Below, in pieces: positions 1-16,579 of a stretch of 64,000 bases of DNA. The translations under genes and the position numbers were made by a program. Each line of letters starts with the position of its first letter. Positions within the stretch are counted from its first letter, which is position 1. The notes beneath the pieces were generated by a model. That model was not told the origin of the DNA, searched no databases, and saw only the letters and a program-made list of their open reading frames with translations. Source of the DNA: Salisapilia sapeloensis CBS 127946 (taxonomy: Eukaryota > Protista > Oomycota). The stretch is taken from the NCBI GenBank assembly GCA_023334545.1, contig JAADVB010000059.1, positions 19,524-83,523 on the forward strand, read 5' to 3'.

Positions 1-2148
1 CTCGTCCTCCACTCTGGTATTGAGCTCGAGAACCAGGAAGAAGCGTTCCAAGTGCACTCTGGTCGAGCGACGAAGATTGTGCTATCGACAAACATTGCCG
101 AGAGTAGTGTGACGATCCCAGATGTTACGCATGTGATTAATTGCGGCGTGGAAAAGAATATTGAAATGCCCAACGCTGGTAGTAGTCATGCAGAAGTGCT
201 AGTGGACGCCTGGTGTTCTCGAGCGTCCGCTAAGCAACGCTCTGGTCGTGCTGGACGTGTCATGCCAGGCACTGCCTTCCATCTCATGCCGGAAGAGTTC
301 TTCACCAAGTGTCTAGCCGAGTACTCGACGCCTGAGATCTTGCGTAAGCCCCTTGATCGAACGATTTTGCTATTGAAAGCCAAGATGAAGGATTATGGTA
401 TCCCGAGTGATCTCTTAGCCGAGACACTGAATGCGCCGAGTAAGCAAAATGTCGCTGGTGCATACAGACTGTTGGCTCGACATGAAGCGTTGGATAGTGA
501 CATCGAGACGAAGGCGGAGATGACTCGCTTTGGTGAATTCGTATGCCACATCCCGTTGAGCCTAGAGCTCTGTCGATTGTTGATGACAGGTATGTTCGTA
601 TCGACAAAGGAGGAAAAAAGTAGTAAGCAAAGCTCTTGGAGGATACTACTGCACACTGTCATTCTCGTAGCTATCCTATCAGCTGAAGATCTCTTCACGA
701 AACCGTCGTTCTACCACGCACACAGTCCTTCTAGCTACATGGAAGACATGAAAGAAAATTTAGCTGCGAAGATGGGTCTGGATAAAGGTGAGTGGAGTGA
801 ACCACTATCTATGTGGGCATTCTATTGCCAGATCTTGAGCACGAAACCGAAGGGATTGCAGGATCGTAGGTGGAAGATTGCCTTGACGAAGAACTGCATC
901 TCCCATCGTCGTTTCCAGACACTCAACTTTATAGTATCAGACATTTGTGGTCGACTGGTGAGACTCGCGAGGCGAGAGGAAGGCCGGTTTGGTCAGATGC
1001 TGGATGAAGGAGCGGTCAAGATGCTCGGGAAGCTCGAGAACTATGCTTCCTCTCAGAATGCATCCGACCCGCAGCTCGTGCAAATGGCAAAGAAAGCGTT
1101 GCAGACCAACGGGGATGGACGACAGATCACACAAGCACTTCGGTTCCTCATCGTGCATAACTTTGATGAAAACTTGATCGTCGGCAAATTCCAACCGTCG
1201 AATGCGAAGAAGTCACAAAGTGATACAGAGGAAGCGACGTTGAAACTAGGCAAGGAAGAAGCTGCGAGCTTTGCTTCGTTAAAGAGTGGGGAGAAGATGT
1301 ATATGTTTGATCAGCTAGCAACGCAAGAGGAGAATGTCATCAAGGCAGTGCAAGAACAACCGACGAAAATCCGAATTACATTCAAGGCCAATCCTCCGAC
1401 GTCATCGGATATCGCGCCAGAATTTGCACTCCCGTCATTACCTATCTCTCTCTTGCACTATGTTGTCGAGAAGGGCTTCCCCGTCAACCTCGGACGAGTC
1501 GTCTCGCAGGATACGGAGCACAGTCATCGCTTCCGACTGGGAGAGACGTCGACGTGCAAAGTGACGTGGTCGCCGGTTGCCAAGCAGGGCAGTGTCTACA
1601 CTACAAGTCGGAGTCTATTTGGTCTGCCGCTGCGTAACTCGGAGGCGACGCAGAAGAAGCAGGCACAGACGCAGTTCCGAGCTGTGTATGCCGAACGGAC
1701 GTATCTTGGTGACGAGTCCAAGATGCATGCTGGTAAATGCACGTTGCTGCCGTCGGGTTCGGCAGGCTACTTTCCCATCTTGCTGCTACTGACGGCGCGT
1801 CGTGGCAAGGGAGTGTTCATCCACGTTGGACAGACGACTGGACAGATTCTGGCTGTGACATTGAATGCTGTCACCACTGCGACGATGCCGAAGGGGTATG
1901 CACTGGATTGTTCAGTGCTGGATCCAATCAATACCTGCCGTCAAGCACTATCGGACTCTTTCAATGCGAACTCGGAGTCGGACCGATTGGCCATGGAGCA
2001 CATCCTTGCATTCACCGACGATGCCAACTACGTCGTGAAGAAATCCGAAGATACATTCAAGATGGTTAAGCTCAATATGGCAGGTAGACCAGCAAGTAAG
2101 GAGGGTGAGGAGACATTTGAGAGTCGATACCCTCCCTTCGTGGGTTAA
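1..2148 (+). CDS. DExH/DEAH-box RNA helicase, C-terminal part (HELICc + HA2 + C-terminal extension); 5' end lies outside the window
   Basis: Frame is open from base 1 (LVLHSGIELENQEEAF). Motif V region STNIAESSVTIPDV and motif VI QRSGRAGR are present, followed by an HA2-like segment (MTRFGEFVCHIPLSLELCRLL). Confidence 0.85.
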   Translation, partial: LVLHSGIELENQEEAFQVHSGRATKIVLSTNIAESSVTIPDVTHVINCGVEKNIEMPNAGSSHAEVLVDAWCSRASAKQRSGRAGRVMPGTAFHLMPEEFFTKCLAEYSTPEILRKPLDRTILLLKAKMKDYGIPSDLLAETLNAPSKQNVAGAYRLLARHEALDSDIETKAEMTRFGEFVCHIPLSLELCRLLMTGMFVSTKEEKSSKQSSWRILLHTVILVAILSAEDLFTKPSFYHAHSPSSYMEDMKENLAAKMGLDKGEWSEPLSMWAFYCQILSTKPKGLQDRRWKIALTKNCISHRRFQTLNFIVSDICGRLVRLARREEGRFGQMLDEGAVKMLGKLENYASSQNASDPQLVQMAKKALQTNGDGRQITQALRFLIVHNFDENLIVGKFQPSNAKKSQSDTEEATLKLGKEEAASFASLKSGEKMYMFDQLATQEENVIKAVQEQPTKIRITFKANPPTSSDIAPEFALPSLPISLLHYVVEKGFPVNLGRVVSQDTEHSHRFRLGETSTCKVTWSPVAKQGSVYTTSRSLFGLPLRNSEATQKKQAQTQFRAVYAERTYLGDESKMHAGKCTLLPSGSAGYFPILLLLTARRGKGVFIHVGQTTGQILAVTLNAVTTATMPKGYALDCSVLDPINTCRQALSDSFNANSESDRLAMEHILAFTDDANYVVKKSEDTFKMVKLNMAGRPASKEGEETFESRYPPFVG

Positions 2149-3156: not shown

Positions 3157-6100
3157 CTACTCAAAGTCACTGTCGTCACCATCCTCCATCTCTTCAAATT
3201 CGCTACTGTGCCCACCATCATCCTCGTCGCTCACCAAGTCCGTGTACACGACAGGTTTCTTCGCTCGACCTGCTCGTCGAGGTGCAATCGGCGCAACCTC
3301 CTCCACTTCTTCTTCACTGCCACTCTCCTGCTTCTTGCTAGCAGGCTTTGACTTTGGTTTTGCTTGACTCTTCGAACCATTCGCCTTCGTGCCATTCGCC
3401 TTCGCACCATTTGCTGGAGCTTTCTTAGGCGTGTTGCTCGGTCGCTTGGCAAGTCGTTCCGCCAACGACAAGTTCTCCACTTCCTCTTCTGAAGACTCTT
3501 TCATAGGCTCTTCCTTCAGCTCTTCCTTTGCTTCTTCCTTCGGTTTAGCTTCAAAGAAGTTTGCGATGCTCGACTTGGTTTTTGGAGCAGCAGGAGGCTT
3601 GGGCTTCGCCGTCATCTTTGGTTTTGCCGCTGTCTTGGGCTTCGCAGGCGATTTCGGTTTCGCCGGTGCTCTCCGTTTCTTCGGTCTCTCTTCATAGTCC
3701 GAGTCTTCACCATCCTTCTTCCGCTTCGTCTTCTTCGGACGCACCTTTTGCACCTTGGACTGCATTTCGACTCGTGTTTCCTCCGTCTCGACAATCATCT
3801 GCTCAAGCTTTTCCAAATCATTCAGCCATAGACTATCTACCGCCGTCGCATCCAACTCGGCATACTCTCTTCGTCTCTCTTCCACCTCCGACTTGAGTTT
3901 ATCGACTCTTTCCTTGGTCAAACTCCAGATCTTTAACGACAGCAAGTAATCGTATCCCTTGGCAGCTTCCCCTACATCCGTCTCATCATCACTTGACTCC
4001 GACTCCTCCTTCTTACTACTCGCCTGGGATTTGATCTGGTCGTAGCCTTCGTCCAGAAGCTGTTGCAAGATATCTTCTCGCTTCCGATTGCTCACGATCA
4101 TCTGACCTTCTACGACTGCAAGCACGAAGCGAGCTTTATTCGACAGCAACTTGATTTGGAACGCTAGCTTACTTAGCATTGATTCCTTCCGCTTCGCATA
4201 AAAGTCCAGACGCAAGTCGTAGAACTCATCAATGACTTCATGCGGGTTCTTGTACTTTTGAATCTGTCCTTCATGATCAAACATGTGCATATTGGACGTC
4301 GATAATGTCGTTTCGAGTTTAAATTGCTTGATAATACCACCTGGAGCTTCCCGAATCGACTTGAGTCGATTCGGATCCAATGTCAACGTAAAGAGGACTT
4401 TGCTTTCTGTATGATTCTCCTTGAACTCTTTCACCACTTCCTTCTCCACCAGTGATTCTAAAAACGTCTTGTATGGTTGTGTCCACGTACGAATGGGTAA
4501 CTCGGTGATCACGAGTGTACTCTCATCCGGTTCTTCATAAGTGCCTTGGACGACGAATGTCTTGCCGCCATCTCGGTTATTCGTCGGCTTGGCAAAGATC
4601 TGACCAGAGAAACCACGATACCAAGGTACAAGTTCCTCCATCTCTTCTCCCTTCAACTTCTTTCTCAAGTTTGCAATCAAGTCTAATGGGTTGTAGTTCG
4701 GGATGGTGCACGACCAACCTGTACCAATACCTTCATTCCCGTTCACGAGTGCCATGGGGATCACTGGCATGAACCATTCCGGCTCAATCGTTTCTCCATC
4801 TTCTTGTAGATGGTTTAGGATGTCGTTATCTAACGGATCAAAGATACAGCGAGAGAGTTGCTCGAGGTTTGTGAAAATATAACGCGGACTAGCGGCATCT
4901 CGTCCGCCCATCAAACGCGTACCGAATTGACCGTTCGGAGACAAGAGATGGATGTTGTTGCTACCTACAAAGTCTTGTGCCATGTTCACGATCGTCGCGT
5001 GAAGACTATTCTCGCCGTGATGGTACGCAGTGTGCTCTGCGACGTAACCAGCGAGCTGTGCGACCTTGATCTCGACCTTTAAATTGCGTTTAAAGCATGC
5101 GTACAACACCTTCCGTTGGGACGGTTTAAACCCATCAACAACGCTCGGAATCGATCGCAAGTTGTCTGCCATGGAAAAGAGGATGAGCTCTTTGTTCACA
5201 AAGTCCGCGTACGGGATTTCGCTCACGTCGTGGTCAATATGATCGCCCAAAGTGTATCCACGCAGCCAATCCTTGCGTTCCTCCACGCGCTTCTTACTGA
5301 AAGCCATATCGATCGAGTCTCCATCCGCTTCTTCACCATACACAAAGTCGATCTGATGCTTGCCCAAGTCGGAAAAGTACTCTTTCGCCTCGGCATTGGA
5401 GCTCGTACCGAGACCTTTATAGTACTTGATTTTCCATCCACGTCCGTGATTCGTACTCTCACGCCATGCTTCGTACTCTGGCATGGTAAAGAACACTTTC
5501 TTCTGCGTACCTTTAGTGCATTTGACAATCGGCGTAATAAACTCTTGCAAAAAGCCTTCGATACGTAGCAAGGATGGCCAAAAGTGATGGATAAAGTTGA
5601 TCACGAGACCTTTGATGTGGCTACCGTCGTGATCTTGATCTGTCATCACCATCAAGTGACCATATCGCAGACTCTTCGTGTTGTCGTACGTCTCGCCGAC
5701 CCTCAGTCCGAGGATCTTGATCAAGTTCTGGATCTCTGCGTTTTCCATAATCTGCTTATGACTCGCTTCTCGAACGTTCAAAAGCTTTCCACGGAGAGGG
5801 AAGACACCGTACTTGTCTCTACCGACGACTGCCAAACCACCAACAGCAGTACTCTTGGCTGAGTCCCCTTCCGTCAGAATCAACGTACATTCTTTTCCTT
5901 TAGCTGTGCCAGCCCAATTCGCATCATCCAGCTTCGGGATACCAAGTAGCTTGACTTTGCGACCACTGCTGCCACCCTTTCGGCGTAGTGCAGCGGTTTG
6001 TTTAAACTCGGCAAAAGAAAGAATGCGATCCACAATGCCACTTTTTGCGATTTTTTTCATAAATCCATCGCTCAAAGTATACGTCGATCCAAATGAATTC

Positions 6101-7540
6101 GGACGAGTCGTAAGTGTTTCCTTGGTCTGAGAGTCAAAAGCTGGATTCTCGATCAAGGCATTTACGTACACCATGAGATGATTTTTAATATACGAAGGTT
6201 TGACGCCGTCATTCTTCTTCTTCACGGCAGCACTGAGCTTGGCTGTGATCTGGTCTGTGATATAGTTCACGTGCTGTCCGCCTTTCGTGGTACAAATGCC
6301 GTTCACAAAGCTGATTTGTTGGAAACTGTCGTCACTAAGTGCAACTCCGACTTGCCATCTCTCACCCGGCTTGTCGAAGAACACCTCGGGTTCACTATTT
6401 GAGGCGTCTCCAGATTTTGTGCCACTTGGAGAAGGATACATCTTTACATACTCTGCAAACGTACGCACAGGCACGAGTTCACCGTTCAAGTAGACCTTGA
6501 GCGACTTATCAGATACGCCAGCAATATCGTAAACGCGCTTTTTAAAGAGCGCAATGATATCTCTATCCAGCTTGTCCATTTGGAAACGCTCCAGATCGGG
6601 TTTGAATGAAATGCAAGTGTAATCCTTTTTAGACCACGAAGTGATCTTCGGCTTGTTAATCTTCCCCATATTGTCCGTAAAAACTTGCTTGTACTTGAGT
6701 TGGTTGCTCTTGTCTGCTGTCTCTACGGTGAATTCTGTCGAAAAAATATTCGCAAGCTTTGCACCATATCCATTCCGTCCTCCCGTTGTCTTCTTCTGCT
6801 TGTCGTTAAAATTGCTGCCCGTAAGCAAGTTACCAAAGATAAGCTCTGGCACATACACTTTGTGCTCTTTGTGCATGACGACTGGGATACCGCTACCATT
6901 ATTCCAAACAGAAATGCGATTATCCTCAGAACTAATGTCCACTTTCAAAGTGTTCATCGTCTTGTCGCGTTGCTTATTATCGTACGCATTGACAATAATT
7001 TCGTCAAAAATCTTGTACAAACCAGGGATCTACACGTACATCGAGCACTTAGTCATAAGCGATCAACCAATTATTTAAGCAATACTTACAAACGTGATCT
7101 TTCGGTATTCCATCTTCTTACTTTCATCGTCAAAGACCCACATGTCCTGTGTCACGTGCTCCGTCGACCCAACGTACGTGTCCGGTCGCAAGAGAATGTG
7201 TTCGATAGGAGTCTTCTTCTGGTAGATTTCCTCTACACTTTGCCCATTCTCGTCTACGCCAGTACCATCCATGGCGTCATCTTCATCGTCACCACTCGAC
7301 TGCTTGCTACCACCCGTTTTCTTACTCGTAGCACCAGTCAACGTCGTCTGCTTTGTCTTAGCCGGAGCTTTCTTTTTCGCAGGCTGCTTCTTTGGTGGAG
7401 GAGATGCCTCGTAGTCGCTCACATCCTCCTCTCCGTCCGACGAGATTTCGTATGCCTACGTTCACATATCACAAGGTCATATATACAGCTATAGGGTAGA
7501 ACTACAATGTAGGTTAGAGGTATACCTCTTCAGAATCCAT
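3157..7540 (-). CDS. TOP2: DNA topoisomerase II (type IIA); exons 7540-7526, 7455-7090, 7029-3157
   Basis: YQKKTPIEHILLRPDTYVGS, spliced ITF|IPGLYKIFDEI, GGRNGYGAKL, TEGDSA, PLRGK, MTDQDHDGSHIKGL, YKGLGTS and ASPRYIF (catalytic Tyr). Acidic/basic CTD with PAKPK repeats. Both introns are canonical GT-AG (70 and 60 nt) and in frame. Confidence 0.97.
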
Positions 7541-7764
7541 GGATACCCTGTCAAGTAGATCGGACGATGCTGCGGTACTTGCGCCAACTGCAACGTTTTC
7601 AAAATGCGGCGCGTAGTTCAAATTTATAAAGTGGGTTTAAATTAGTAGTAGGAAAAGGTACCTTTACTATATGAATTTGACGGATGCAAGAGCAGAATAG
7701 AATGATAGTGGAGCAATTTAGTTTAGATGATAAGATCATGAAGCGTCGTGATAAGAATCGAAGC

Positions 7765-10700
7765 ATGACGCTGAAAAGCTTTTGGACGACATCCTTTTGC
7801 TTTGCGCTCTTCGTTTCCTGTACGCTTTATATGCCTTTGTATGGAGAAGAGGATGTGACTTCTATGCTGTATTCGTCGAGTCGATGCACAGAAGTGTCTC
7901 GAACGAACGCATGCCGAAATTATGAACGTTGCAAGGAAACTCATCGATGTGCACGAGGAGTGGAAGGTATATTCCTTTTGAATGGTCTTCATTTTTTCGA
8001 TTAATCAGTTTTGTACGTAGAGTATCGTATAAGAGAAGCACAACTTCATAGTTATACTAATCAATATCCTGGAGGACAGCAACATGCAATCGCTTTATCG
8101 AGCGATTTTGAAGATTGGAAAGCTGGATCGCATCAGTGGGACATTACGCGAGGTAAAGAACGCTATAGTGACTATCTTATACACTGCAAATAATGCTTCG
8201 GACTTGCATTAGTAGACAAAACGAGTGCTTCTACCCATCTCATGGGCTGGGATACATATTCCTTCCCCTTGATCGGATCTCTGGAGCTATCGAAAGGTTA
8301 CCTTCTATTTGACACGGATACAGCCCAGCTATCTGGCGACATGACACTGAATGGAACTATTGCTAAGACAAGAAACGGTACCCTGGTGACTGTTTTCAAC
8401 TTTCTCACAGTTTATCTCGGTCCTGATGTCCGAGTACGATTCAAAGGGCACAACGCGATCGCCATTTTGTCTCGCAGTAGTATGCTTATAAACACCGACA
8501 TGAAAGTACGCCCAGGGACACTAGGAGGCTTTCCTGGTGGCGGCTATGTCGGTTATGATGCTACTAATAACAATCGAAATGGACCAGGAAGTTCAAATGT
8601 ACGAGTGTACGTGGAAACCTTGTCGACATATGCTACCCATGTACCAGAAGTGCAAGAGATTGAAACAATCGTTGGTGAAGGCCAGCGATTAGGAGGCTAT
8701 TTTAGATTATTAGATCATACATCCAGTCTATCAACGTCAAGAATCGATTACGATACGAACGCTGAAACTCTTGAACATATTCTGGAGACTGCATTTTCAA
8801 ATATTGGACAGATACATGTTCATCAGGAACGTGAAGAGGGTGAAATCTGGTCAGAAGTTGGACGCCTATGGAGAATCACGTTTTTAACCGCAGTGGGTAA
8901 TGTACCTCAGCTCCAAGTGGAAAGTAAACTGACAGGAATTGGTGCGGATGTATTGACAAGAACAATACGGGAAGGAAACCAACTTGGAGGGACATTTCAG
9001 CTGCAGTTTCTAAACAAAATAACGAGGCCGCTTGCACATGATGTCAGTGCTCATGACCTTCGTAGTGCTCTTTTACAAGACTTTCCATTCCTTGTGGACG
9101 CAAAAGCTACCAGGACAGATCCATTATCCAGTTGTAATCAAGGATCCACTCTTCCTGATCAAAGGGCAGTATCGACAATGTCCATTTTACAAGATGCTCT
9201 TCTTTATCCATCTAATTGGACTACCCCATCCAAGCAACTAGTGTATGATCCAGAAAGTCTAAAACGCTACCAGGACAGAGTTTGTTCAAATGGCCGTGGG
9301 GGAGCGGATGGGTATGTATGGAAACTTCAGTTGTGGACAAGAGTCGGTAGCAAGTCTTCAACGAGTCCAAAGGCTGATGCTTATGGTCAAATAGACGCTG
9401 TAGAAGAGCTACGTGTCGTCGACAGTGGCCTAAGTGGAGAAGGAGCACTAGCAGAAGTAGTTCATTCGGGCGCATTTACTTTATCTTTCGGTGGTGGTGG
9501 TGCTTCTTTTACAAATACAGGTGGGAACGGATACATTCATGCCCAAATGGATGTAAGAGAGATCTATGCAGATCGATATATTTCGGATTTAATTGCCGGT
9601 AGTGGTGGGAGTGGAGGCGGGACAGAGCCTTTGGACATGTACCCTCTTCTACAACCGCCACTAGGAGGTGCTGGCGCTGGAGCTATGCTACTATCTGCTG
9701 TAAACGATGTTGTCATTGGGTCTCACGGGCGTATTCAAGTAAATGGTGGTAATGGTATGTCCTCCGCAAATGCTGGAGGCGGAGGCTCAGGTGGTACCAT
9801 TCTCATCGTGAGCCAAGGTACTGTCAGCCACCATGGCTCAATACAAGCCGTTGGAGGGCATGGTGGCACTTCATCTTTGCCTTCTACATCAACTTCTCAT
9901 AGATATGCAGGCGGTGGTGGAAGTGGAGGTAGGATCGCCATCTACGCGCAAAGCTACTCTGCATGGGGTGAAGGTACTCTTGAACTCAATGGTGGATCTT
10001 CACAAGACTTGTCACAAAGTGGAGGTAGAGGGACATTGTATATCCATGTGCAGACAAACCTTGCGTATCGTGTAGATCCTACCATAGGTGCTGCCGGAAC
10101 GTTTAAATCACTTTTGGTTAGTGGTGCCGAATCCTATCAGTATGGAAAAGAGGGTTCTTTAGATGGCATGAATCAAATGAGCTTAAATGGACCAAGATAT
10201 CGTATCGACAATGACACACATCGCCGACCGACTCGGATATCATATTTTGTTCGCATCGGGAATTTTGATCATGGCAACATTGGTTCCAATCGCGGTGCAC
10301 TCTTTGGTGTCCATCGAGGTTACGATGATGCTGATAAGGAGGGAGAAGAACTGTTGGTTGGAATTGCTATTGTCAATGGAAACTTTGTATACGAGTCGAA
10401 CACATTTGGATGGCCGCGACGCGTCTTTCAGCGAAAGATAGAGCCTAAGAGATGGTATAAGGTTGACGTGTACCTTAATTGGGACTTGCACCACTACTCT
10501 ATTTACCTAAACGATGTTCTTAAAGTCTATCAGACTCGATTTGACGGAGAGCAAGTATCAGCTATTAGTCTAAATAACTTTCATCCGATGTCTATTTGGT
10601 GGGATGAAATTTATGTCGGTGAAAGCTTCTTGATGAACTTTGTCTGTCCATCCGTGTCACTCTTCCCCTCTTCTATTGAGACGCTCGATGAAACACTTCG

Positions 10701-13700
10701 AGTTCCTTATCGACGATTGCGAAAGTTGTGGAAGGAGAATACTTATGGACCAGAAACGTCGTTTCATCCGATGTCGAAGCATGAAAGTCACTTATCTCAA
10801 CAAGAAGTTTATCAGTATGACACGAGTGGTCAAGTAGCTTTTGACGGAGAAGAGCATTATGCATTTCTAAACGATATTAAAGAATTTGAAGAGGAAATAG
10901 AAAGTGATGACGACCAAAGTGAAGCTGTGACGAGAGCAGAAATGATGTTTGTTGATAACTTTCCATCCGACGCAACCATCGTTATACCACTTGAAACTGG
11001 AATGGATTACACGACACTGAATGCAGATCGCTCGTACAATACGAAGACAGCATACACACAATTAAATCGTTCTCGTATCTATTGGTATTCAGAAGTTTAC
11101 AACGAAACCCTGGGAATTGGAGGTGTCGGTGCTTGTTCAACGATGGATTACCAAGACTGGCGAAATGAAGGCATCATGCTCCATTTTGACAACCTTACCG
11201 ATCCCTTTGGCGATGTGTTAAGCCACACTCTTGTCGCTGACCGACCAAAAGCTATTTACAATCCCAAGACAAAGAAATTTGTGCTGTGGTTTCATGTCGA
11301 TACAATTGAAAACACAATAGGCCTTGCAGGTGTTGCTACAAGCAAACTTCCAAACGGACCCTTTCGCTTCCAGCGTAGCATGTACCCGACGGCCCCACTG
11401 GAATCACCTGGTGGTCAATCAATTAATGAGACTCGTGATCAAACAATTGCACTTGTACCATTGCATCACCCGTCAAAAGACATTCCATCGACAGCATATC
11501 TCATCCGGACGTATTTTAAGACAGTCGAGTATTGGTTACCACGTCCAGTGATGGATCCACTTTGGGAAAGCGTGAAAGCAGCGGATGGGTCAATTGACTT
11601 TTCATTAAACTACCATCGAGCAGTGCATCATGAAGGTTACGACGATCCGGACGACATCTACCTTCAACGATGGCGGATGGAAGGTGTGCCTTGGGCAGTG
11701 GTCTGCTGTGCAATAACGAATCTGACTGATTGCTTGACGATAACAGAAGTACCGAATGCCACCCATCCGAACGTTTGTCCTGATGATCATTCGAAGAAGA
11801 TGAAAATACTTGGTCAAGCTCAGACGGCATCGCAAGCTTCCACTCGATACTTGGACCCTAACGATCCGTACAATAGCATATATCGTCCAAACTCTGTCCC
11901 ATCTTATACAACATGGGGAGCTCAAGTGTATAAAGTCAAAACTTGGAGAGGAACGTACTTTGACGCACTTAGCACGAACATTACAAAGTACGTTTTCGAT
12001 CGATATGCAAGTGAGAGGCGTCGAATACAAGTAGCAAATGATCCTACGATACCATATGAATACTTTGATCCATCACCACCGACATTTATACCAACAAATG
12101 ACGTTGAAATACTCGATCTCATGTTTGGAAACTTGGGAGTACCAATTACCAGTGAATTCCAGGCTGCTCATTCCTCTCCAGATCTCGCTGAAATCGATCC
12201 CAATGAAGATGGAAAGATCACTTCGTACGAGGTTGCAATGTTAGAGAAGAAGCTAGAGAATAAGGAGCTTGCGAAGCATGTGGTTGAAGCACTTTTATAC
12301 GATTTTGAAAAGATGAAATGGAATCAAATTCATGCATTAGATGTCAACAACGATGGAGAGATTACTTTCAGCGAATTTGAAGCGTGGGTTGGAATGGACC
12401 CAAATCTTTTATTCGATCAATATGACCTAGACAAGAATGGATATCTGGATGAGAATGAGCTATCTCGCTTCCTGTGGGATCGGCAACTCCCACGCATCGA
12501 CACGGCGATCATCCTTCTCGATCCGTCATTTGATGGGAGAGTGTACTATAGTCGATTTTTGGCTATTGTCCGTGACTTTCCCGATTTTATCTATCGGCAA
12601 TATGACTTTGACAACTCGGAAACATTGACACAAGACGAAATTGACTTGATCGCAAAAGATTTAGGCGCTCCATTCGCGATACCTGGTAAGCTTGAAGCTT
12701 TGAAAGATGCATCCATCCATGCTATTCATAAAGAGGACTACAAACGTTGGTTTAGTGCGACAACGAGTTTACTAGCAGGGGAGCGAAACTATTTAAAGGT
12801 CGATAATGCTGTCCATGCTACAAAACCTGACAGTCTCGTCGGTCCAATGCAAGTGGTCGAAAGACGTCGGGCAAAGTACGTTGGTATAAGCAGATTAAGT
12901 GAGGACTATTTGGATGTGGAAAAAGTGATCGAAGAGATTGAAGGCGACTTTGAAGGTGGTCGAGACGACTTACTTCAGTACTTTGCGTTTGCCCAAGATC
13001 TCTTTGGTCTCACTGAGCTGTCTGTAGTATCTCTGGGTGCAGATGATAACTTAATTCAAGATTATGGTCATACGTACCGACAGTCGCTATCACCTTCGGA
13101 TCTACATAATCGCGCGTCATATTGGAATGGGAGGTATTGGGAAGGTCGTCCAGCAGCTCCTGCACTCTTTACATACGGTTCCCAGTGTCTGCATGTAGCA
13201 GGCGTGGATGCTGAAGATTTAGGTTGCTTACCATGCCTTACTCGGTCACCTTACGTGACGTCAACAATCGAAGAGTATGAATCAGTTAGTCGAGGTACTG
13301 GCCATTGCGACGGATACAAGGAACTTGATGCATACTTGAAACAATTTGATCAACAAGTTGCCATCCAGCTCCAATACCAGCAATCTTCACGCTTTGGACC
13401 GCAAGGCTTACAACCACACTACTCACCATGCTGGAACCAATCCCAATTCTATCCTTGCGACGTGCACAAAGTACTGGAAGGAGATATTGGTGGCAGTCTT
13501 TCAGACAACTTAGTCACGACAGAGTACAATCTTGCTTGGCAACGCCATCCGAATAGCATCGGTTCATCTCAAAAGATCCGTGCTGGAGATGGCCAGAAGG
13601 AGTCGATTGGACCATCATTTCGAGAAAGATTTCCGAGTCGAAATCGAGCCATGGGTGATGAAGAAACCTTGGATACAACTGTGGTTTATCAGCCAGATCA

Positions 13701-13731
13701 ATATGAAGATTCGCTTGGCGGTGGTACTTGA
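7765..13731 (+). CDS. Giant (~1950 aa) predicted secreted multidomain protein: Gly-rich repeats, LamG-like segment, GH43_24-like propeller, EF-hand array; exons 7765-7966, 8021-8152, 8216-13731
   Basis: Signal-peptide-like MTLKSFWTTSFCFALFVSCTL. Two phase-1 GT-AG introns join in frame to the 1829-aa ORF. Motifs: GGGGSGGxIxI repeats; GVGACSTMDYQDWRNEG, DRPKAIYNPKTKKFVLWFHVD, AGVATSKLPNGPF, ETRDQT; EF loops DPNEDGKITSYE, DVNNDGEITFSE, DLDKNGYLDENE. Confidence 0.75.
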
Positions 13732-14240
13732 GAAACTACTTTACTGAGGAATGATAGGATCATTTTTCCAAGTTACCATATCATGACTCGCATTTACAGA
13801 TAGTGTTACAATCGTTTATTGCCGTGCTTGTGTTTGTAGATTCAATGAAGTTACCACGTGCCTTATAAAGCGACTAGATTCATTCAAAATTGGCATGAAA
13901 GATGTGACCATAACGCTTGGAAGTATATGTTAATGGTTGGAAACTCTGAACGAGTGAAAAGTTGGAACATAAGATTGCGGGATGGATCTTTGTAACGGAA
14001 TAACGATCTCAGACTGGCGACAAGCGAAGAGGCACTCGCCAGATCTCTGGATTAACATGCAATTTACGACGACAGTTACTAAAGATCGATTTGTGTCTGG
14101 TCATGACTTATTGAACGCCTCTTCGTCTGATACCTGGAAAGATTTTAGTGGCGGGTCCTGGTGTTGCTCATTGCTTACTTTTAAACAATAGCGATAAACG
14201 CCAACTTCCACCTACTTCTTCATCCGAGCATCTCGCCAGC

Positions 14241-16387
14241 ATGAGAAGAGATAGTGACGCCAGTGAAGACAGCGTCAATGTCGACGATAGCTATGCTTCA
14301 TCCCAAGTTGTTCCGACGATTTCATCCGCACGAGCATCGTACCAATACAGTTTCCAATGCATCGATAGCTCTCGAGGAAGTGCTGTCAATGTTTCACGGC
14401 AATCACTCGACCCGAGTTTGACACGCAAGTCGAACGATGTATTTATTCGTGGCTCACTTGCTGGAAAGCAGATCGAAAAGATCCCACTTGCATCTACTGG
14501 CATACCGGAGCGACCGAAAGACTATAAAGGTCGAATTCGGGTAAGCATTATTTACTTATACATACAATCCAAATGTCCATAGCATTCATTTACATTGGTT
14601 ATATTCATAGACATGGCCAGGCGTCCTCCTTTTCCTGCTTCTATTTTGTGGAGCAATTTTTTCAATCTATTACCAAGGCTTGAAAGCCTACAACGCTCGT
14701 GTCGAACGCGTTCAGCAGTATGAAAAGCGTCGCTTTAGTGGAACGAGCATTACTGGTGGGAAGACGACTACAGATGAAATTATTGGAGGTGAACTGATCT
14801 CTGATGACGGAGCGATTGGCAATCCAAATGAGTATCCGGATGAAGGTGCGTTATCCACACTATTTGTTGACGATACGAATGTTCATGTATTGCACGCACA
14901 GAATGTGAGCTTCCAGATTACCAAAGCAAAGATGGTCATGTCGTTGCTGTATCCGAGAATGGGACTGAAGTGCCGATCAAGATCAAAGGCATTAACTGGT
15001 ACGTTTACTTCCTGTATATTCGTCATTTATCCCATTAAGCTCATATACTTTCGACGCTAGGTTCGGCATGGAAACGTACGGGATAAGTGTTTATATTCTA
15101 TCGTCATGCGATACTCACTTGTGGTTATGATTACATAGAGGCACTGTTGTACCGCTTGGATTGTGGTCTAACAGCGATAACGGAACGACGCTATATCAAA
15201 TTGCTCGATTCTTATCCACGAACAAGTTTAATGGCGTTCGTCTGCCAGTGTGTGTGGATTACTTGCTTAAAAACACCAAGCCACCCCTCGGGCTCGTCAA
15301 CAGCTACGAGAATCGTGCGCTTTCCATGAAGAATTACATGTCGATGCTTCAAAGTATTATTAAAGCGTTTGCTTTCCGACGGATTGGTGTTCTAATATCC
15401 ATGCATACACTCACAAGCAGTGACCATGGTGAAGTATGGTTTGACGAAGAGATCAGTGAAGACGACTTCTTGGACTCGATTGACGTTCTGACGAAAGGAC
15501 TTTGCAGTGAAGAGTATTTCAATATCATGGGTATCGACTTGAAGAACGAACCGTATGGAGCTACGTGGGGCGATGGGACAGACATTGACTATAAAGCTGG
15601 TGCGGAACGTATTGCGAATCGGATGCTCGAGGGATGTCCACAATGGATGGGCTTCGTCGAAGGCATTAATGGCGCTCATTCCGTCGAGATTGACGGTACA
15701 GTGTTCGACTACTACGACTGGTACCTTATGAACGCTATGACAAAAACGTGCAGTTGGGTTAAGCATATGTGATATGTAGGTATGGAGGAGGATTACAGCC
15801 AGCCAAGGAAGACCCATTGAAATTCGACATTAAAAACAAAATCGTCTACGCGCCTCATTACTACAACTCTGGAGGTATCTCCTGTGTGATAACTCAATGT
15901 AAATGCTTGGGATTTAACCTGCTGTATGATAGTGTACCCACAAGATTATTTGTACGAGTCCTTAAGTGGAGAAGAGTTTGTTGAGCTCGATGATGCCACA
16001 TTACGCTCGAGAATTAAAGGCACGATGGATCACATGTTTGGCTTTTTGGCATCGGAAACAGGTCCAGCAGTGATGCTTGGTGAGTTTGGAGGTTTGTATG
16101 CGAAGGACTTGCATCCAAAGAAGACGACACAACGCTGCACGGATTTCCAGATCGAAGTCATCAAGCAACCAGGATGGGCTGGAGGTTTCGTCTGGAGTTT
16201 AAATCCAGAGAGTGCGTATCAGTACAATCCAGTCACACCAGGACATTATACCGAAGGTGTCTTGGAAGACGACTGGTTGAGCGCAGATGATGTCTTTTTA
16301 AAAGGTATGGAGGCGATGGACGATATGGATAACCTCGTCCCATTCCCATGCTTCCCGAAGAAGTCTAAATCCTCGTCCAAAGATTGA
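14241..16387 (+). CDS. Glycoside hydrolase family 5 endo-beta-glucanase (oomycete Cel5A type) with N-terminal type-II membrane anchor; multi-exon
   Basis: TM segment WPGVLLFLLLFCGAIFSIYY; IKIKGINW|FGMET, VRLP, acid/base GIDLKNEP, APHYY and nucleophile LGEFGG, spread over short-intron exons. Start codon is approximate. Confidence 0.85.
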
Positions 16388-16579
16388 GTTCAAAGCGAGG
16401 ACGTACGAGATTGATGCATTAAATCCAAGTTTAAAACTTTTTCCGACTAACTTTGCTCGTTTTTCTTGTGCACGGATGATGTCTTCTGTATTTAGCATCA
16501 GACGAATAAGCTGGCCCAAAGTAGCTTTAGCAATCGGATTGGATAAGTTCAAAAGATTGTATTCTAGTTTTGACTCGGG

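What the first reader, a model, noticed from the sequence alone, without database searches (positions are those of the whole stretch)
11100..12960. GH43_24-like beta-propeller apparently split by an inserted EF-hand array in a giant secreted protein
Seen: GH43_24-like blades (GVGACSTMDYQDWRNEG, DRPKAIYNPKTKKFVLWFH, AGVATSKLPNGPF, ETRDQT, STAYLI) stop at ~11510. The motif that normally follows AYLI within a few residues (cf. LHIxxLxxDYLxV) reappears ~450 aa later as YVGISRLSEDYLDV (~12880-12920). The intervening segment holds at least five EF-hand-like loops (DPNEDGKITSYE, DVNNDGEITFSE, DLDKNGYLDENE, DPSFDGRVYYSR, DFDNSETLTQDE). Known: GH43_24 enzymes are exo-beta-1,3-galactanases. Inference: a Ca2+-gated extracellular glycosidase or glycan-binding protein in which an EF module is inserted in a blade loop. 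The catalytic acid (EAP motif) is not clearly retained.
Basis: partly seen in the sequence, partly recalled or inferred. Interest (0 to 1): 0.75.

Follow-up and report, generated by a model that had tools for sequence, protein, structure and literature searches.

The report
GH43-like propeller carrying nested EF-hand module
A giant secreted oomycete protein holds a remodelled sugar-cutting-enzyme fold in which one hairpin has been stretched into a stalk carrying an unknown domain plus a calcium-binding EF-hand array; the split is real and I found no description of it in the library I searched, but the fold looks incomplete and no enzyme activity or calcium control is shown.

Summary
Residues about 940-1092 of the 1829-codon ORF 8242-13731 match GH43 subfamily 24 exo-beta-1,3-galactanases (PDB E 1e-12 alone, 5e-22 as a family profile). 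The ISRL..DYL segment (12877-12918) is the only later part that matches GH43_24 (profile-profile P 4e-4). In two AlphaFold models it returns to blade III as strands C and D (VIA-align Z 17.6 and 14.8 to Pc1,3Gal43A). Five EF loops lie at 12196-12639; four are canonical and conserved in 49 oomycete sequences.

- The insertion is composite. A domain of about 145-160 aa (Q1104-1247) is present in every homologue, in 164 clusters out of 1.84 billion proteins, and has no known relative. The EF module (Q1248-1520) occurs only in oomycetes and MAST-4-like stramenopiles; it is one event on the core tree.
- It replaces the blade III B-C loop, which forms the +1 subsite in Pc1,3Gal43A.
- No counterpart of blade V, Trp229 or the base Gln263 was found, so a closed five-blade propeller is not supported.
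- Ca2+ gating is untested.

RNA contigs show that the gene is spliced and expressed and that the EF module stays in the mRNA. They also show an in-frame 72-nt segment (12956-13027) spliced out just after the putative acid. The scan had flagged this same stretch before (s1-280881).

The parts
7684..7966 (+). Exon 1: start codon(s), signal-like hydrophobic segment and a Cys-rich conserved N-terminal motif
   Evidence: The translation aligns to the N termini of Pythium, Phytophthora and Saprolegnia orthologues. RNA contigs end this exon at 7966.
7967..8020 (+). Intron 1, 54 nt, GT..AG, in frame. An alternative acceptor gives a 113-nt intron, 7967-8079.
   Evidence: Joints in the RNA contigs of X2 (54 nt) and of X3-X5 (113 nt); sequence.
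8021..8152 (+). Exon 2, conserved N-terminal segment
   Evidence: tblastn to orthologues; RNA contigs.
8153..8215 (+). Intron 2, 63 nt, GT..AG
   Evidence: The joint is seen in all four RNA runs.
8216..13731 (+). Exon 3. It holds the 1829-codon ORF (8242-13731) used for Q numbering: residue n starts at 8242+3(n-1).
   Evidence: ORF list and translation. Full-length orthologues occur in all oomycete orders sampled.
11059..11517 (+). GH43_24-like blades I, II and strands A-B of blade III (Q940-1092). Equivalents of subsite -1 residues: Glu57 = E951 (11092-11094), Glu102-Arg103 = D1000-R1001 (11239-11244), Asp158 = D1066 (11437-11439). Tyr126 is replaced by Asn1024.
   Evidence: alignments to 7byx and 7byv; conservation; residue roles from PMC7939473.
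11518..11550 (+). Outgoing strand of a two-stranded beta-ribbon stalk. Strand B of blade III is extended to Q1103.
   Evidence: DSSP strand 195-214 of model 1 and 165-180 of model 2.
11551..11982 (+). Nested family-specific alpha/beta domain (Q1104-1247). It holds the most conserved residues of the region: invariant W1108, H1125, R1126, Y1133, D1134, Q1142, R1145, E1147 and W1235.
   Evidence: Present in all homologues. Found in 164 clusters of 1.84e9 proteins, always between the blades and the return strand. No Pfam, PDB, Atlas or GH43 profile match.
11983..12801 (+). EF-hand module (Q1248-1520): linker plus six helix-loop-helix units in three pairs. Loops at 12196-12231, 12340-12375, 12424-12459, 12520-12555 (Arg at position 12), 12604-12639 and a degenerate one at 12703-12741.
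   Evidence: Pfam EF-hand_7/1/6/5. Calmodulin, ALG-2 and CDPK hits at E 6e-12 to 1e-8. AlphaFold helices with pLDDT around 90. Loop conservation. Absent from diatom and other homologues. Covered by RNA contigs without joints.
12832..12942 (+). Returning ribbon strand and strands C and D of blade III (Q1531-1567). Includes the ISRL..DYL motif at 12877-12918.
   Evidence: DSSP strands 642-663 and 670-678 with pLDDT 81-93. VIA-align spans the model from residue 10 to 701. hhalign P 3.7e-4 to the LHIAELSDDYL block of GH43_24.
12940..12954 (+). Glu1567-Gly-Asp-Phe-Glu1571: the candidate remnant of the general-acid position (Glu208 of Pc1,3Gal43A)
   Evidence: E1567-G1568 are almost invariant. Position 1571 is E or D in 48 of 48 aligned oomycete sequences and in 27 of 38 others. 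Spacing taken from the 7byv alignment.
12956..13027 (+). In-frame 72-nt GT..AG segment that is spliced out in RNA contigs. It removes Q1572-1595, a predicted helix that is conserved as coding sequence in orthologues (exitron-like).
   Evidence: Joint 12953>13026 (cut +2) in X3 and X4, which are one sample. Sequence. Conservation. Helix 685-699 of model 1.
13028..13236 (+). Conserved tail (Q1596-1665) with Trp- and Cys-containing motifs. It is not recognisably blade IV or V.
   Evidence: hhalign P 0.35 against GH43_24. No PDB hit for the profile. Mixed short strands and helices, pLDDT 50-74.

Best explanation
This is the C-terminal module of a secreted protein of about 1,950 aa that is conserved in stramenopiles.

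Anatomy (shown):
- The module descends from a GH43 subfamily 24 beta-propeller, but only blades I-III are recognisable.
- In blade III, the hairpin between strands B and C forms the +1 sugar subsite in real exo-beta-1,3-galactanases. Here it is drawn out into a two-stranded stalk.
- The stalk carries a family-specific domain of about 145 aa.
- In oomycetes and a MAST-4-like lineage, a calmodulin-like module of six EF-hands, four of them canonical, was inserted once between that domain and the returning strand.
- Half of the -1 pocket survives: the equivalents of Glu57, Glu102 (as Asp), Arg103 and Asp158, plus an acidic residue near Glu208.
- The wall normally given by blades IV-V (Trp229 and the base Gln263) is not detectable.

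Mechanism (inferred): the module is a glycan-binding site, or possibly an atypical glycan-cleaving one, built from the old pocket plus the highly conserved nested domain. The EF module acts as a Ca2+-dependent brace that orders the nested domain once the protein meets high Ca2+ in the secretory path or outside the cell. That is a structural role, not a signalling switch.
For: - Homology of blades I-III to GH43_24.
- Residue mapping onto Pc1,3Gal43A.
- The post-insert strands rejoin blade III. Two AlphaFold models agree. VIA-align gives Z 17.6 (rmsd 2.6, 171 aligned, model 10..701 against chain 43..241) and Z 14.8. hhalign gives P 3.7e-4 to exactly the blade III strand C motif.
- The nested domain is universal and specific to the family.
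- The EF module is restricted and is one event on a tree built without its columns (SH-aLRT 98).
- EF loops are canonical and conserved.
- Secretory signal in the window and in orthologues, with no strong membrane-spanning segment.
- The gene is transcribed and spliced, and the EF module is kept in the mRNA.
- The gene is single-copy in its genome.
Against: - No sugar binding, hydrolysis or Ca2+ binding was measured.
- Pfam GH43 does not reach any threshold.
- Tyr126 is replaced, and Trp229 and Gln263 are untraceable, so the pocket may be dead.
- The AlphaFold models are of middling quality (mean pLDDT 70 and 74, pTM 0.57-0.58; nested domain pLDDT 55-85), and I could not inspect coordinates. 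The packing of the nested domain against the pocket is therefore assumed.
- The transcript form seen across 12956-13027 removes 24 residues next to the putative acid. Its effect is unknown.
Confidence: 0.55

Rival explanations
1. One reading: an active extracellular glycosidase, such as an exo-beta-1,3-galactanase or a glucanase. Its five-blade propeller closes around the insertion, and its activity is switched by Ca2+ binding to the EF array.
For: Subsite -1 acidic residues and Arg are retained, and there is a Glu near the acid position. The insertion sits at the +1 subsite loop on the active-site face. Four EF loops are canonical.
Against: No counterpart was found for blade V, Trp229 or the catalytic base Gln263. 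All three residues tested in Pc1,3Gal43A (Glu102, Glu208, Gln263) are essential there (PMC7939473). Diatom homologues end about 75-130 aa after the acid position, too short for two blades. Outside the cell the EF hands would probably be saturated with Ca2+ (my own knowledge).
Confidence: 0.15
2. The GH43-like part is only a vestigial scaffold with no sugar site. The EF module is a Ca2+-dependent protein-protein docking or assembly device (dockerin-like or SPARC-like) that helps build an extracellular matrix, adhesive or spore or zoospore surface structure.
For: There is a weak Dockerin_1 match over the EF pair: E 2.4e-4, 21.7 bits against a cut-off of 22.9. The protein is very large and multi-domain, with Gly-rich repeats and no recognised enzymatic domain. 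Named hits come only from taxa that I know to have flagellated stages, and none from pennate diatoms or non-zoosporic downy mildews.
Against: The residues most conserved with GH43_24 are exactly the sugar-contacting ones: Glu57, Arg103 and Asp158 equivalents are near-invariant. That is not expected of a pure scaffold. The dockerin score is below threshold. No partner is known.
Confidence: 0.22
3. Artefact: the EF block is an unrecognised intron, a separate gene, or a misassembly joined to a GH43 fragment.
For: None beyond the unusual architecture.
Against: The ORF is uninterrupted. About 50 orthologous proteins from independent oomycete genomes show the same order of parts. RNA contigs at 12088-12563, 12405-12709 and 12534-12953 cross the EF block with no joints and no differences.
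Confidence: 0.02

Closest known systems
GH43 subfamily 24 exo-beta-1,3-galactanases (Pc1,3Gal43A 7BYS/7BYX; BT3683 6EUG; BT0265 6EUF; Ct1,3Gal43A 3VSF)
   Same: Blades I-III align by sequence (E to 5e-22) and by shape (Z 15-18). Equivalents of Glu57, Arg103 and Asp158 are kept, and Glu102 is kept as Asp or Glu. The blade III strand C motif (I-[AS]-x-L-[ST]-x-D-Y-L) is kept.
   Different: The B-C loop of blade III, which forms the +1 subsite, is replaced by a stalk bearing about 430 inserted residues. Tyr126 is Asn. There is no EAP motif. No counterpart was found for Trp229, Gln263 or blade V. The Pfam GH43 model is not matched. There is no CBM35. The module is embedded in a protein of about 1,950 aa.
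Calmodulin / penta-EF-hand proteins (e.g. ALG-2, PDB 2ZN9) and CDPK regulatory domains
   Same: Paired helix-loop-helix units with 12-residue loops of the D-x-[DN]-x-[DNS]-G-x-[ILV]-x-x-x-E type. Profile hits at E 6e-12 to 1e-8.
   Different: Here the module is nested inside another domain of a secreted protein. It has six units, one with Arg at position 12 and one degenerate. No target-binding role is known.
Type I dockerin and other extracellular EF-hand modules such as BM-40/SPARC (comparison from my own knowledge, plus a weak Pfam hit)
   Same: Ca2+-binding EF-like loops attached to extracellular carbohydrate-active or matrix proteins, where Ca2+ is structural.
   Different: The Dockerin_1 score is below Pfam's cut-off (21.7 against 22.9 bits). 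Dockerins are terminal 70-aa modules, not nested six-EF arrays.
Integrin alpha I-domain inserted in a beta-propeller loop (an analogy from my own knowledge, not homology)
   Same: A cation-dependent domain nested in a loop on the ligand-binding face of a propeller.
   Different: Unrelated folds (von Willebrand A domain, seven-blade propeller) and unrelated sequence.

Membership tests
GH43 subfamily 24 | Significant sequence similarity to characterised GH43_24 catalytic domains | tested here: met
   E 1.6e-12 for the single sequence and 5.5e-22 for the profile. The match covers only residues 25-175 of the 305-residue catalytic domain.
GH43 subfamily 24 | Match to the Pfam Glyco_hydro_43 model (PF04616) at the gathering score | tested here: not met
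   No hit even at E 10, for the whole protein or for its pieces.
GH43 subfamily 24 | Complete five-bladed beta-propeller | tested here: inconclusive
   Two AlphaFold models align to chain residues 27-246 only, which is blades I-III and part of IV. The tail and the nested domain show no blade IV-V similarity. The models are of moderate confidence and coordinates could not be inspected.
GH43 subfamily 24 | General acid Glu208 (EAP motif) | tested here: inconclusive
   There is no EAP. Glu1571 lies one residue from the expected position and is E or D in all aligned oomycete sequences. Glu1567-Gly1568 are almost invariant.
GH43 subfamily 24 | Catalytic base Gln263 and platform Trp229 | tested here: not met
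   No alignable counterpart. A Gly-Ser-Gln-Cys motif at Q1646-1649 resembles the Gln263 motif, but its spacing is wrong and it is predicted helical.
GH43 subfamily 24 | pKa modulator Asp158 and subsite -1 residues Glu57, Glu102, Arg103, Tyr126 | tested here: inconclusive
   D1066, E951 and R1001 are kept. Glu102 is Asp1000 (Glu in diatom homologues). Tyr126 is Asn1024.
GH43 subfamily 24 | Exo-beta-1,3-galactanase activity | not testable with these tools
   Needs an enzyme assay.
EF-hand (calmodulin-like) domains | Pfam EF-hand models above the gathering score | tested here: met
   EF-hand_7 50.1 bits (cut-off 30), EF-hand_1 42.5 (25.4), EF-hand_6 39.3 (25) and EF-hand_5 38.1 (25.9).
EF-hand (calmodulin-like) domains | Canonical 12-residue loop with ligands at positions 1, 3, 5 and 12 and Gly at 6 | tested here: met
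   Loops 1, 2 and 3 are fully canonical. Loop 5 is canonical except that position 6 varies. Loop 4 has Arg at position 12 and loop 6 is degenerate. The pattern is conserved across 49 oomycete sequences.
EF-hand (calmodulin-like) domains | Ca2+ binding | not testable with these tools
   Needs ITC, DSF or a 45Ca overlay.
Type I dockerin | Pfam Dockerin_1 at the gathering score | tested here: not met
   21.7 bits against a cut-off of 22.9.

The most novel reading that the evidence does not exclude
The nested family-specific domain takes the place of blades IV-V and completes a new kind of composite glycan site on a three-blade GH43 remnant. In oomycetes, the EF module makes access to that site depend on Ca2+. 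An alternatively spliced 24-residue helix next to the acid position adds a second layer of control. This would be a secreted, Ca2+-switchable CAZyme-derived lectin or enzyme, present in the zoospore-forming oomycete pathogens among the named hits.
Probability: 0.12. Interest if true: 0.8.

Novelty: new variant of a known kind. Interest (0 to 1): 0.52.

Why it matters
The protein is single-copy in this genome. It is conserved from Saprolegnia to Phytophthora, and in centric diatoms, a pelagophyte and MAST-4-like stramenopiles. It is annotated only as 'EF-hand domain-containing' or 'carbohydrate-binding protein', and I found no paper on it.

It gives a clear example of domain nesting two levels deep, placed exactly at the substrate-binding loop of a glycoside-hydrolase fold. 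It also shows a GH43 propeller that appears to have lost two blades yet keeps its sugar-contacting residues.

If the module binds or cuts a wall or matrix glycan in a Ca2+-dependent way, it would be a new handle on oomycete surface biology. If not, it is a well-documented pseudo-enzyme.

Tried and rejected
- Pfam on the whole protein and on five pieces gave only EF-hands.
- PDB sequence searches gave nothing for the C-terminal 329 aa, the post-insert profile A3, the nested-domain profile A4 and the upstream 386 aa, Q560-945. The last result argues against a circular permutation with blades IV-V lying upstream.
- An ESM Atlas feature search of the nested domain gave a best score of 0.76, which is noise.
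- Alternative alignment considered: the conserved 'insert' might really be diverged blades III(C)-V, making the DYL match chance. I rejected this. Local hhalign of the insert against GH43_24 gives P 0.34, whereas the post-insert block hits exactly the strand C motif at P 3.7e-4. Both models also pair the post-insert strands with blade III.
- A Gly-Ser-Gln-Cys motif at Q1646-1649 looked like the Gln263 base motif. I rejected it because it is only 15-20 residues from the nearest Trp, against 34-36 in GH43_24, and it is predicted helical.
- Literature searches by eleven accession or locus identifiers and by 'GH43 + EF-hand + oomycete' found nothing relevant.
- The oomycete flagellar-proteome paper (PMC3471859) does not mention such a protein in its main text. 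Its supplements were not read.
- I did not fold or search any joined (spliced) model. All searches used the uninterrupted exon-3 ORF or single exons by reference. The isoform lacking 12956-13027 was not modelled.
Full report
**Gene and coordinates.** The finding lies in one long ORF, 8242-13731 on the + strand, of 1829 codons. I number residues Q1-Q1829, with residue n starting at 8242+3(n-1). The real gene starts earlier. tblastn with orthologue N termini, the translation of 7684-8004 and spliced RNA contigs define the structure:
- exon 1: 7684-7966, with a start codon, a hydrophobic signal-like segment and a Cys-rich motif;
- intron 1: 7967-8020;
- exon 2: 8021-8152;
- intron 2: 8153-8215;
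- exon 3: from 8216.

No strong membrane-spanning segment follows; the best 19-residue Kyte-Doolittle mean is 1.5. Orthologues have clear signal peptides, and one is named 'secreted protein' by its source. 'Giant secreted protein' is therefore reasonable.

- Q942-1065 matches the solved GH43 subfamily 24 exo-beta-1,3-galactanases 6eug, 7byx, 5flw and 3vsf at E 1.6e-12 to 5.7e-8.
- A profile of 89 homologues raises this to 5.5e-22. Foldseek on the AlphaFold model gives E 4e-7.
- Pfam's GH43 model does not match at all.
- Pfam finds only EF-hands, at Q1317-1411 (E 3.6e-13).
- Across 49 oomycete sequences, loops 1, 2, 3 and 5 keep Asp at position 1, Asp/Asn at 3, Asp/Asn/Ser at 5 and Glu at 12. 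Loop 4 has a conserved Arg at position 12, so it is unlikely to bind Ca2+ canonically.
- The model shows a sixth, degenerate helix-loop-helix at about Q1488-1500, which would make three pairs.

**Is the propeller really split?** Four lines of evidence agree.
1. The family profile gives a weak but collinear second stretch. The ISRL..DYL block (Q1549-1569) aligns with Pc1,3Gal43A residues 185-205, ten residues after the AYLL strand.
2. In local profile-profile comparison with an alignment of 120 bacterial GH43_24 proteins, the post-insert block hits only the corresponding LHIAELSDDYL motif (P 3.7e-4). The 160-aa conserved insert and the tail hit nothing (P 0.34 and 0.35).
3. I made two AlphaFold models. 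One covers the window's Q890-1829 (mean pLDDT 69.9). The other covers a Thalassiosira homologue that lacks the EF block (mean pLDDT 74.1). Both predict long strands before and after the insertion at pLDDT 80-95.
4. VIA-align maps model 1 residues 10..701 onto Pc1,3Gal43A residues 43..241 (Z 17.6, rmsd 2.6, 171 aligned). It maps model 2 residues 1..416 onto 27..244 (Z 14.8).

With the blade limits given in PMC7939473, the secondary structure reads as blade III:
- strand A, Q1066-1072, starting with the Asp158 equivalent;
- strand B, from Q1084, which runs on to Q1103;
- strand C, reached by a strand that starts at Q1531 and ends at Q1552;
- strand D, Q1559-1567.

Strands B and C are each about 11-14 residues longer than needed. 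I read this as a two-stranded stalk. The split is thus in the B-C hairpin of blade III. In Pc1,3Gal43A this hairpin holds Asn179, Asn180 and Gln181, which bind the +1 galactose. The insertion therefore sits on the active-site face and replaces a substrate subsite.

**The insertion is two nested things.** Diatom (Thalassiosira, Skeletonema, Conticribra), Pelagomonas and many metagenomic homologues align continuously to Q1247 and again from Q1520, with only 0-34 residues between.
- *Q1104-1247 is part of the family itself.* It contains the most conserved residues of the whole region: invariant Trp1108, His1125, Arg1126, Tyr1133, Asp1134, Gln1142, Arg1145, Glu1147 and Trp1235.
- An exhaustive HMM search of 1.84 billion cluster representatives with this domain alone found 164 proteins. 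Every long one has the order blades - domain - return strand - tail, and none of the newly retrieved long ones has an EF block. The domain has no Pfam, PDB or Atlas relative.
- *The EF module, Q1248-1520, is found only in oomycetes and in two clusters*, one of which contains a protein labelled MAST-4. On a maximum-likelihood tree built only from the core columns, all EF-bearing sequences lie on one side of one branch (SH-aLRT 98). This fits a single insertion, or a single loss, depending on the root.

**Is the propeller complete, and is it an enzyme?** Of the eight subsite -1 residues of Pc1,3Gal43A:
- Glu57, Arg103 and Asp158 have near-invariant equivalents (E951, R1001, D1066);
- Glu102 is Asp in most oomycetes and Glu in diatoms;
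- Tyr126 is Asn;
- the acid Glu208 has no EAP motif. However, Glu1571 lies one residue from the expected position (E or D in all aligned oomycete sequences), and Glu1567-Gly1568 are almost invariant at the end of strand D;
- Trp229 and the catalytic base Gln263 have no counterpart.

The structural alignments end inside blade IV. The ESM Atlas search aligns only about 186 residues of GH43 models of about 330 residues. The sequence after the acid position is predicted as helices and two short strands. Many homologues end 75-130 residues after it. I therefore cannot support 'one five-blade propeller closes around the insertion'. The models suggest a three-blade remnant whose missing side may be filled by the nested domain and the tail, but I could not inspect coordinates, so this is inference.

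**Expression.** Four runs of the same organism hold contigs identical to the window that carry GT..AG joints, so they are RNA-derived.
- Contigs cross the EF module (12088-12563, 12405-12709, 12534-12953) without joints.
- Unexpectedly, the only contigs that cross 12956-13027 (two runs from one sample) lack these 72 bases, with GT..AG ends and in frame.
- The removed 24 residues, Q1572-1595, start right after Glu1571. They form the helix that follows strand D in model 1, and they are conserved as coding sequence in other oomycetes and in diatoms. This looks like an exitron.
- Contigs cannot show whether the unspliced form also exists.

**Mechanism, and what is shown versus inferred.**
- Shown: the homology of blades I-III, the place and composite nature of the insertion, the conservation of sugar-contacting residues and of four canonical EF loops, the secretory signal, and transcription.
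- Inferred: the old half-pocket plus the nested domain form a glycan-binding, or atypically catalytic, site. The EF module acts as a Ca2+-dependent brace. Because the protein is secreted, I expect the EF hands to be loaded constantly, so a structural role is more likely than gating.
- Rivals: a true Ca2+-gated glycosidase (0.15), a non-sugar scaffold with a dockerin-like Ca2+-dependent docking module (0.22), and an artefact (0.02, refuted).

**Novelty.** The parts are known kinds (a GH43_24 fold, EF-hands). The architecture is a two-level nested insertion at the +1 subsite loop of an apparently truncated propeller, conserved across stramenopiles. I found no paper describing it. I rate it a new variant of a known kind, with interest 0.52.

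**Limits.** The isoform without 12956-13027 was not modelled. The structure tools gave only ranges, not residue pairs. Taxon sampling of eukaryotes is limited to what the protein collection names.

Noticed in passing
window 12956-13027: An in-frame 72-nt GT..AG segment inside conserved coding sequence is spliced out in the only RNA contigs that cross it (runs X3 and X4, one sample). It removes 24 residues directly after the putative acid Glu1571. This looks like an exitron. The unspliced form was not seen, but contigs cannot exclude it.
   Followed up: partly
window 7967-8079: Intron 1 has two acceptors. The 54-nt form (to 8020, run X2) keeps exon 1 in frame with the main ORF. The 113-nt form (to 8079, runs X3-X5, whose contigs show one extra A at the joint) differs by a length that is not a multiple of three. 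It would put the signal-peptide exon out of frame with the main ORF. The extra A is unexplained.
   Followed up: partly
window 3157-7020 (-): The divergent upstream neighbour is a type II DNA topoisomerase (Pfam DNA_topoisoIV, TOPRIM_C, DNA_gyraseB). A Pythium insidiosum gene model (P0028, 2556 aa) fuses topoisomerase domains with this protein, which suggests that the neighbourhood is conserved.
   Followed up: partly
window 14148-16400 (+): The downstream neighbour encodes a GH5 (Pfam Cellulase, E 1e-8) split over several exons. This puts two carbohydrate-related genes side by side.
   Followed up: no
homologue set: Named homologues come from zoospore-forming oomycetes, centric diatoms (Thalassiosirales), Pelagomonas and MAST-4. 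No hit came from Hyaloperonospora, Peronospora, Bremia or pennate diatoms. This may indicate a link with flagellated life stages, or it may reflect sampling or gene-model gaps. Brown algae are also missing, which argues against a simple rule.
   Followed up: partly
G000 (whole assembly) and the tree: The assembly is only 22.4 Mb in 1365 contigs. On the core tree, the window's protein branches below Albugo plus Pythium/Phytophthora and above Saprolegniales. Its best identity to any public orthologue is about 60-66%. The organism therefore appears to be an oomycete without a close sequenced relative in the collection.
   Followed up: no
window 8242-10900 (Q1-890): The N-terminal 890 residues have no Pfam or PDB match, although they are conserved from oomycetes to diatoms (Q21-1241 aligns at about 32%). 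They include Gly-rich repeats at about Q420-600 and a conserved block at about Q640-870.
   Followed up: partly
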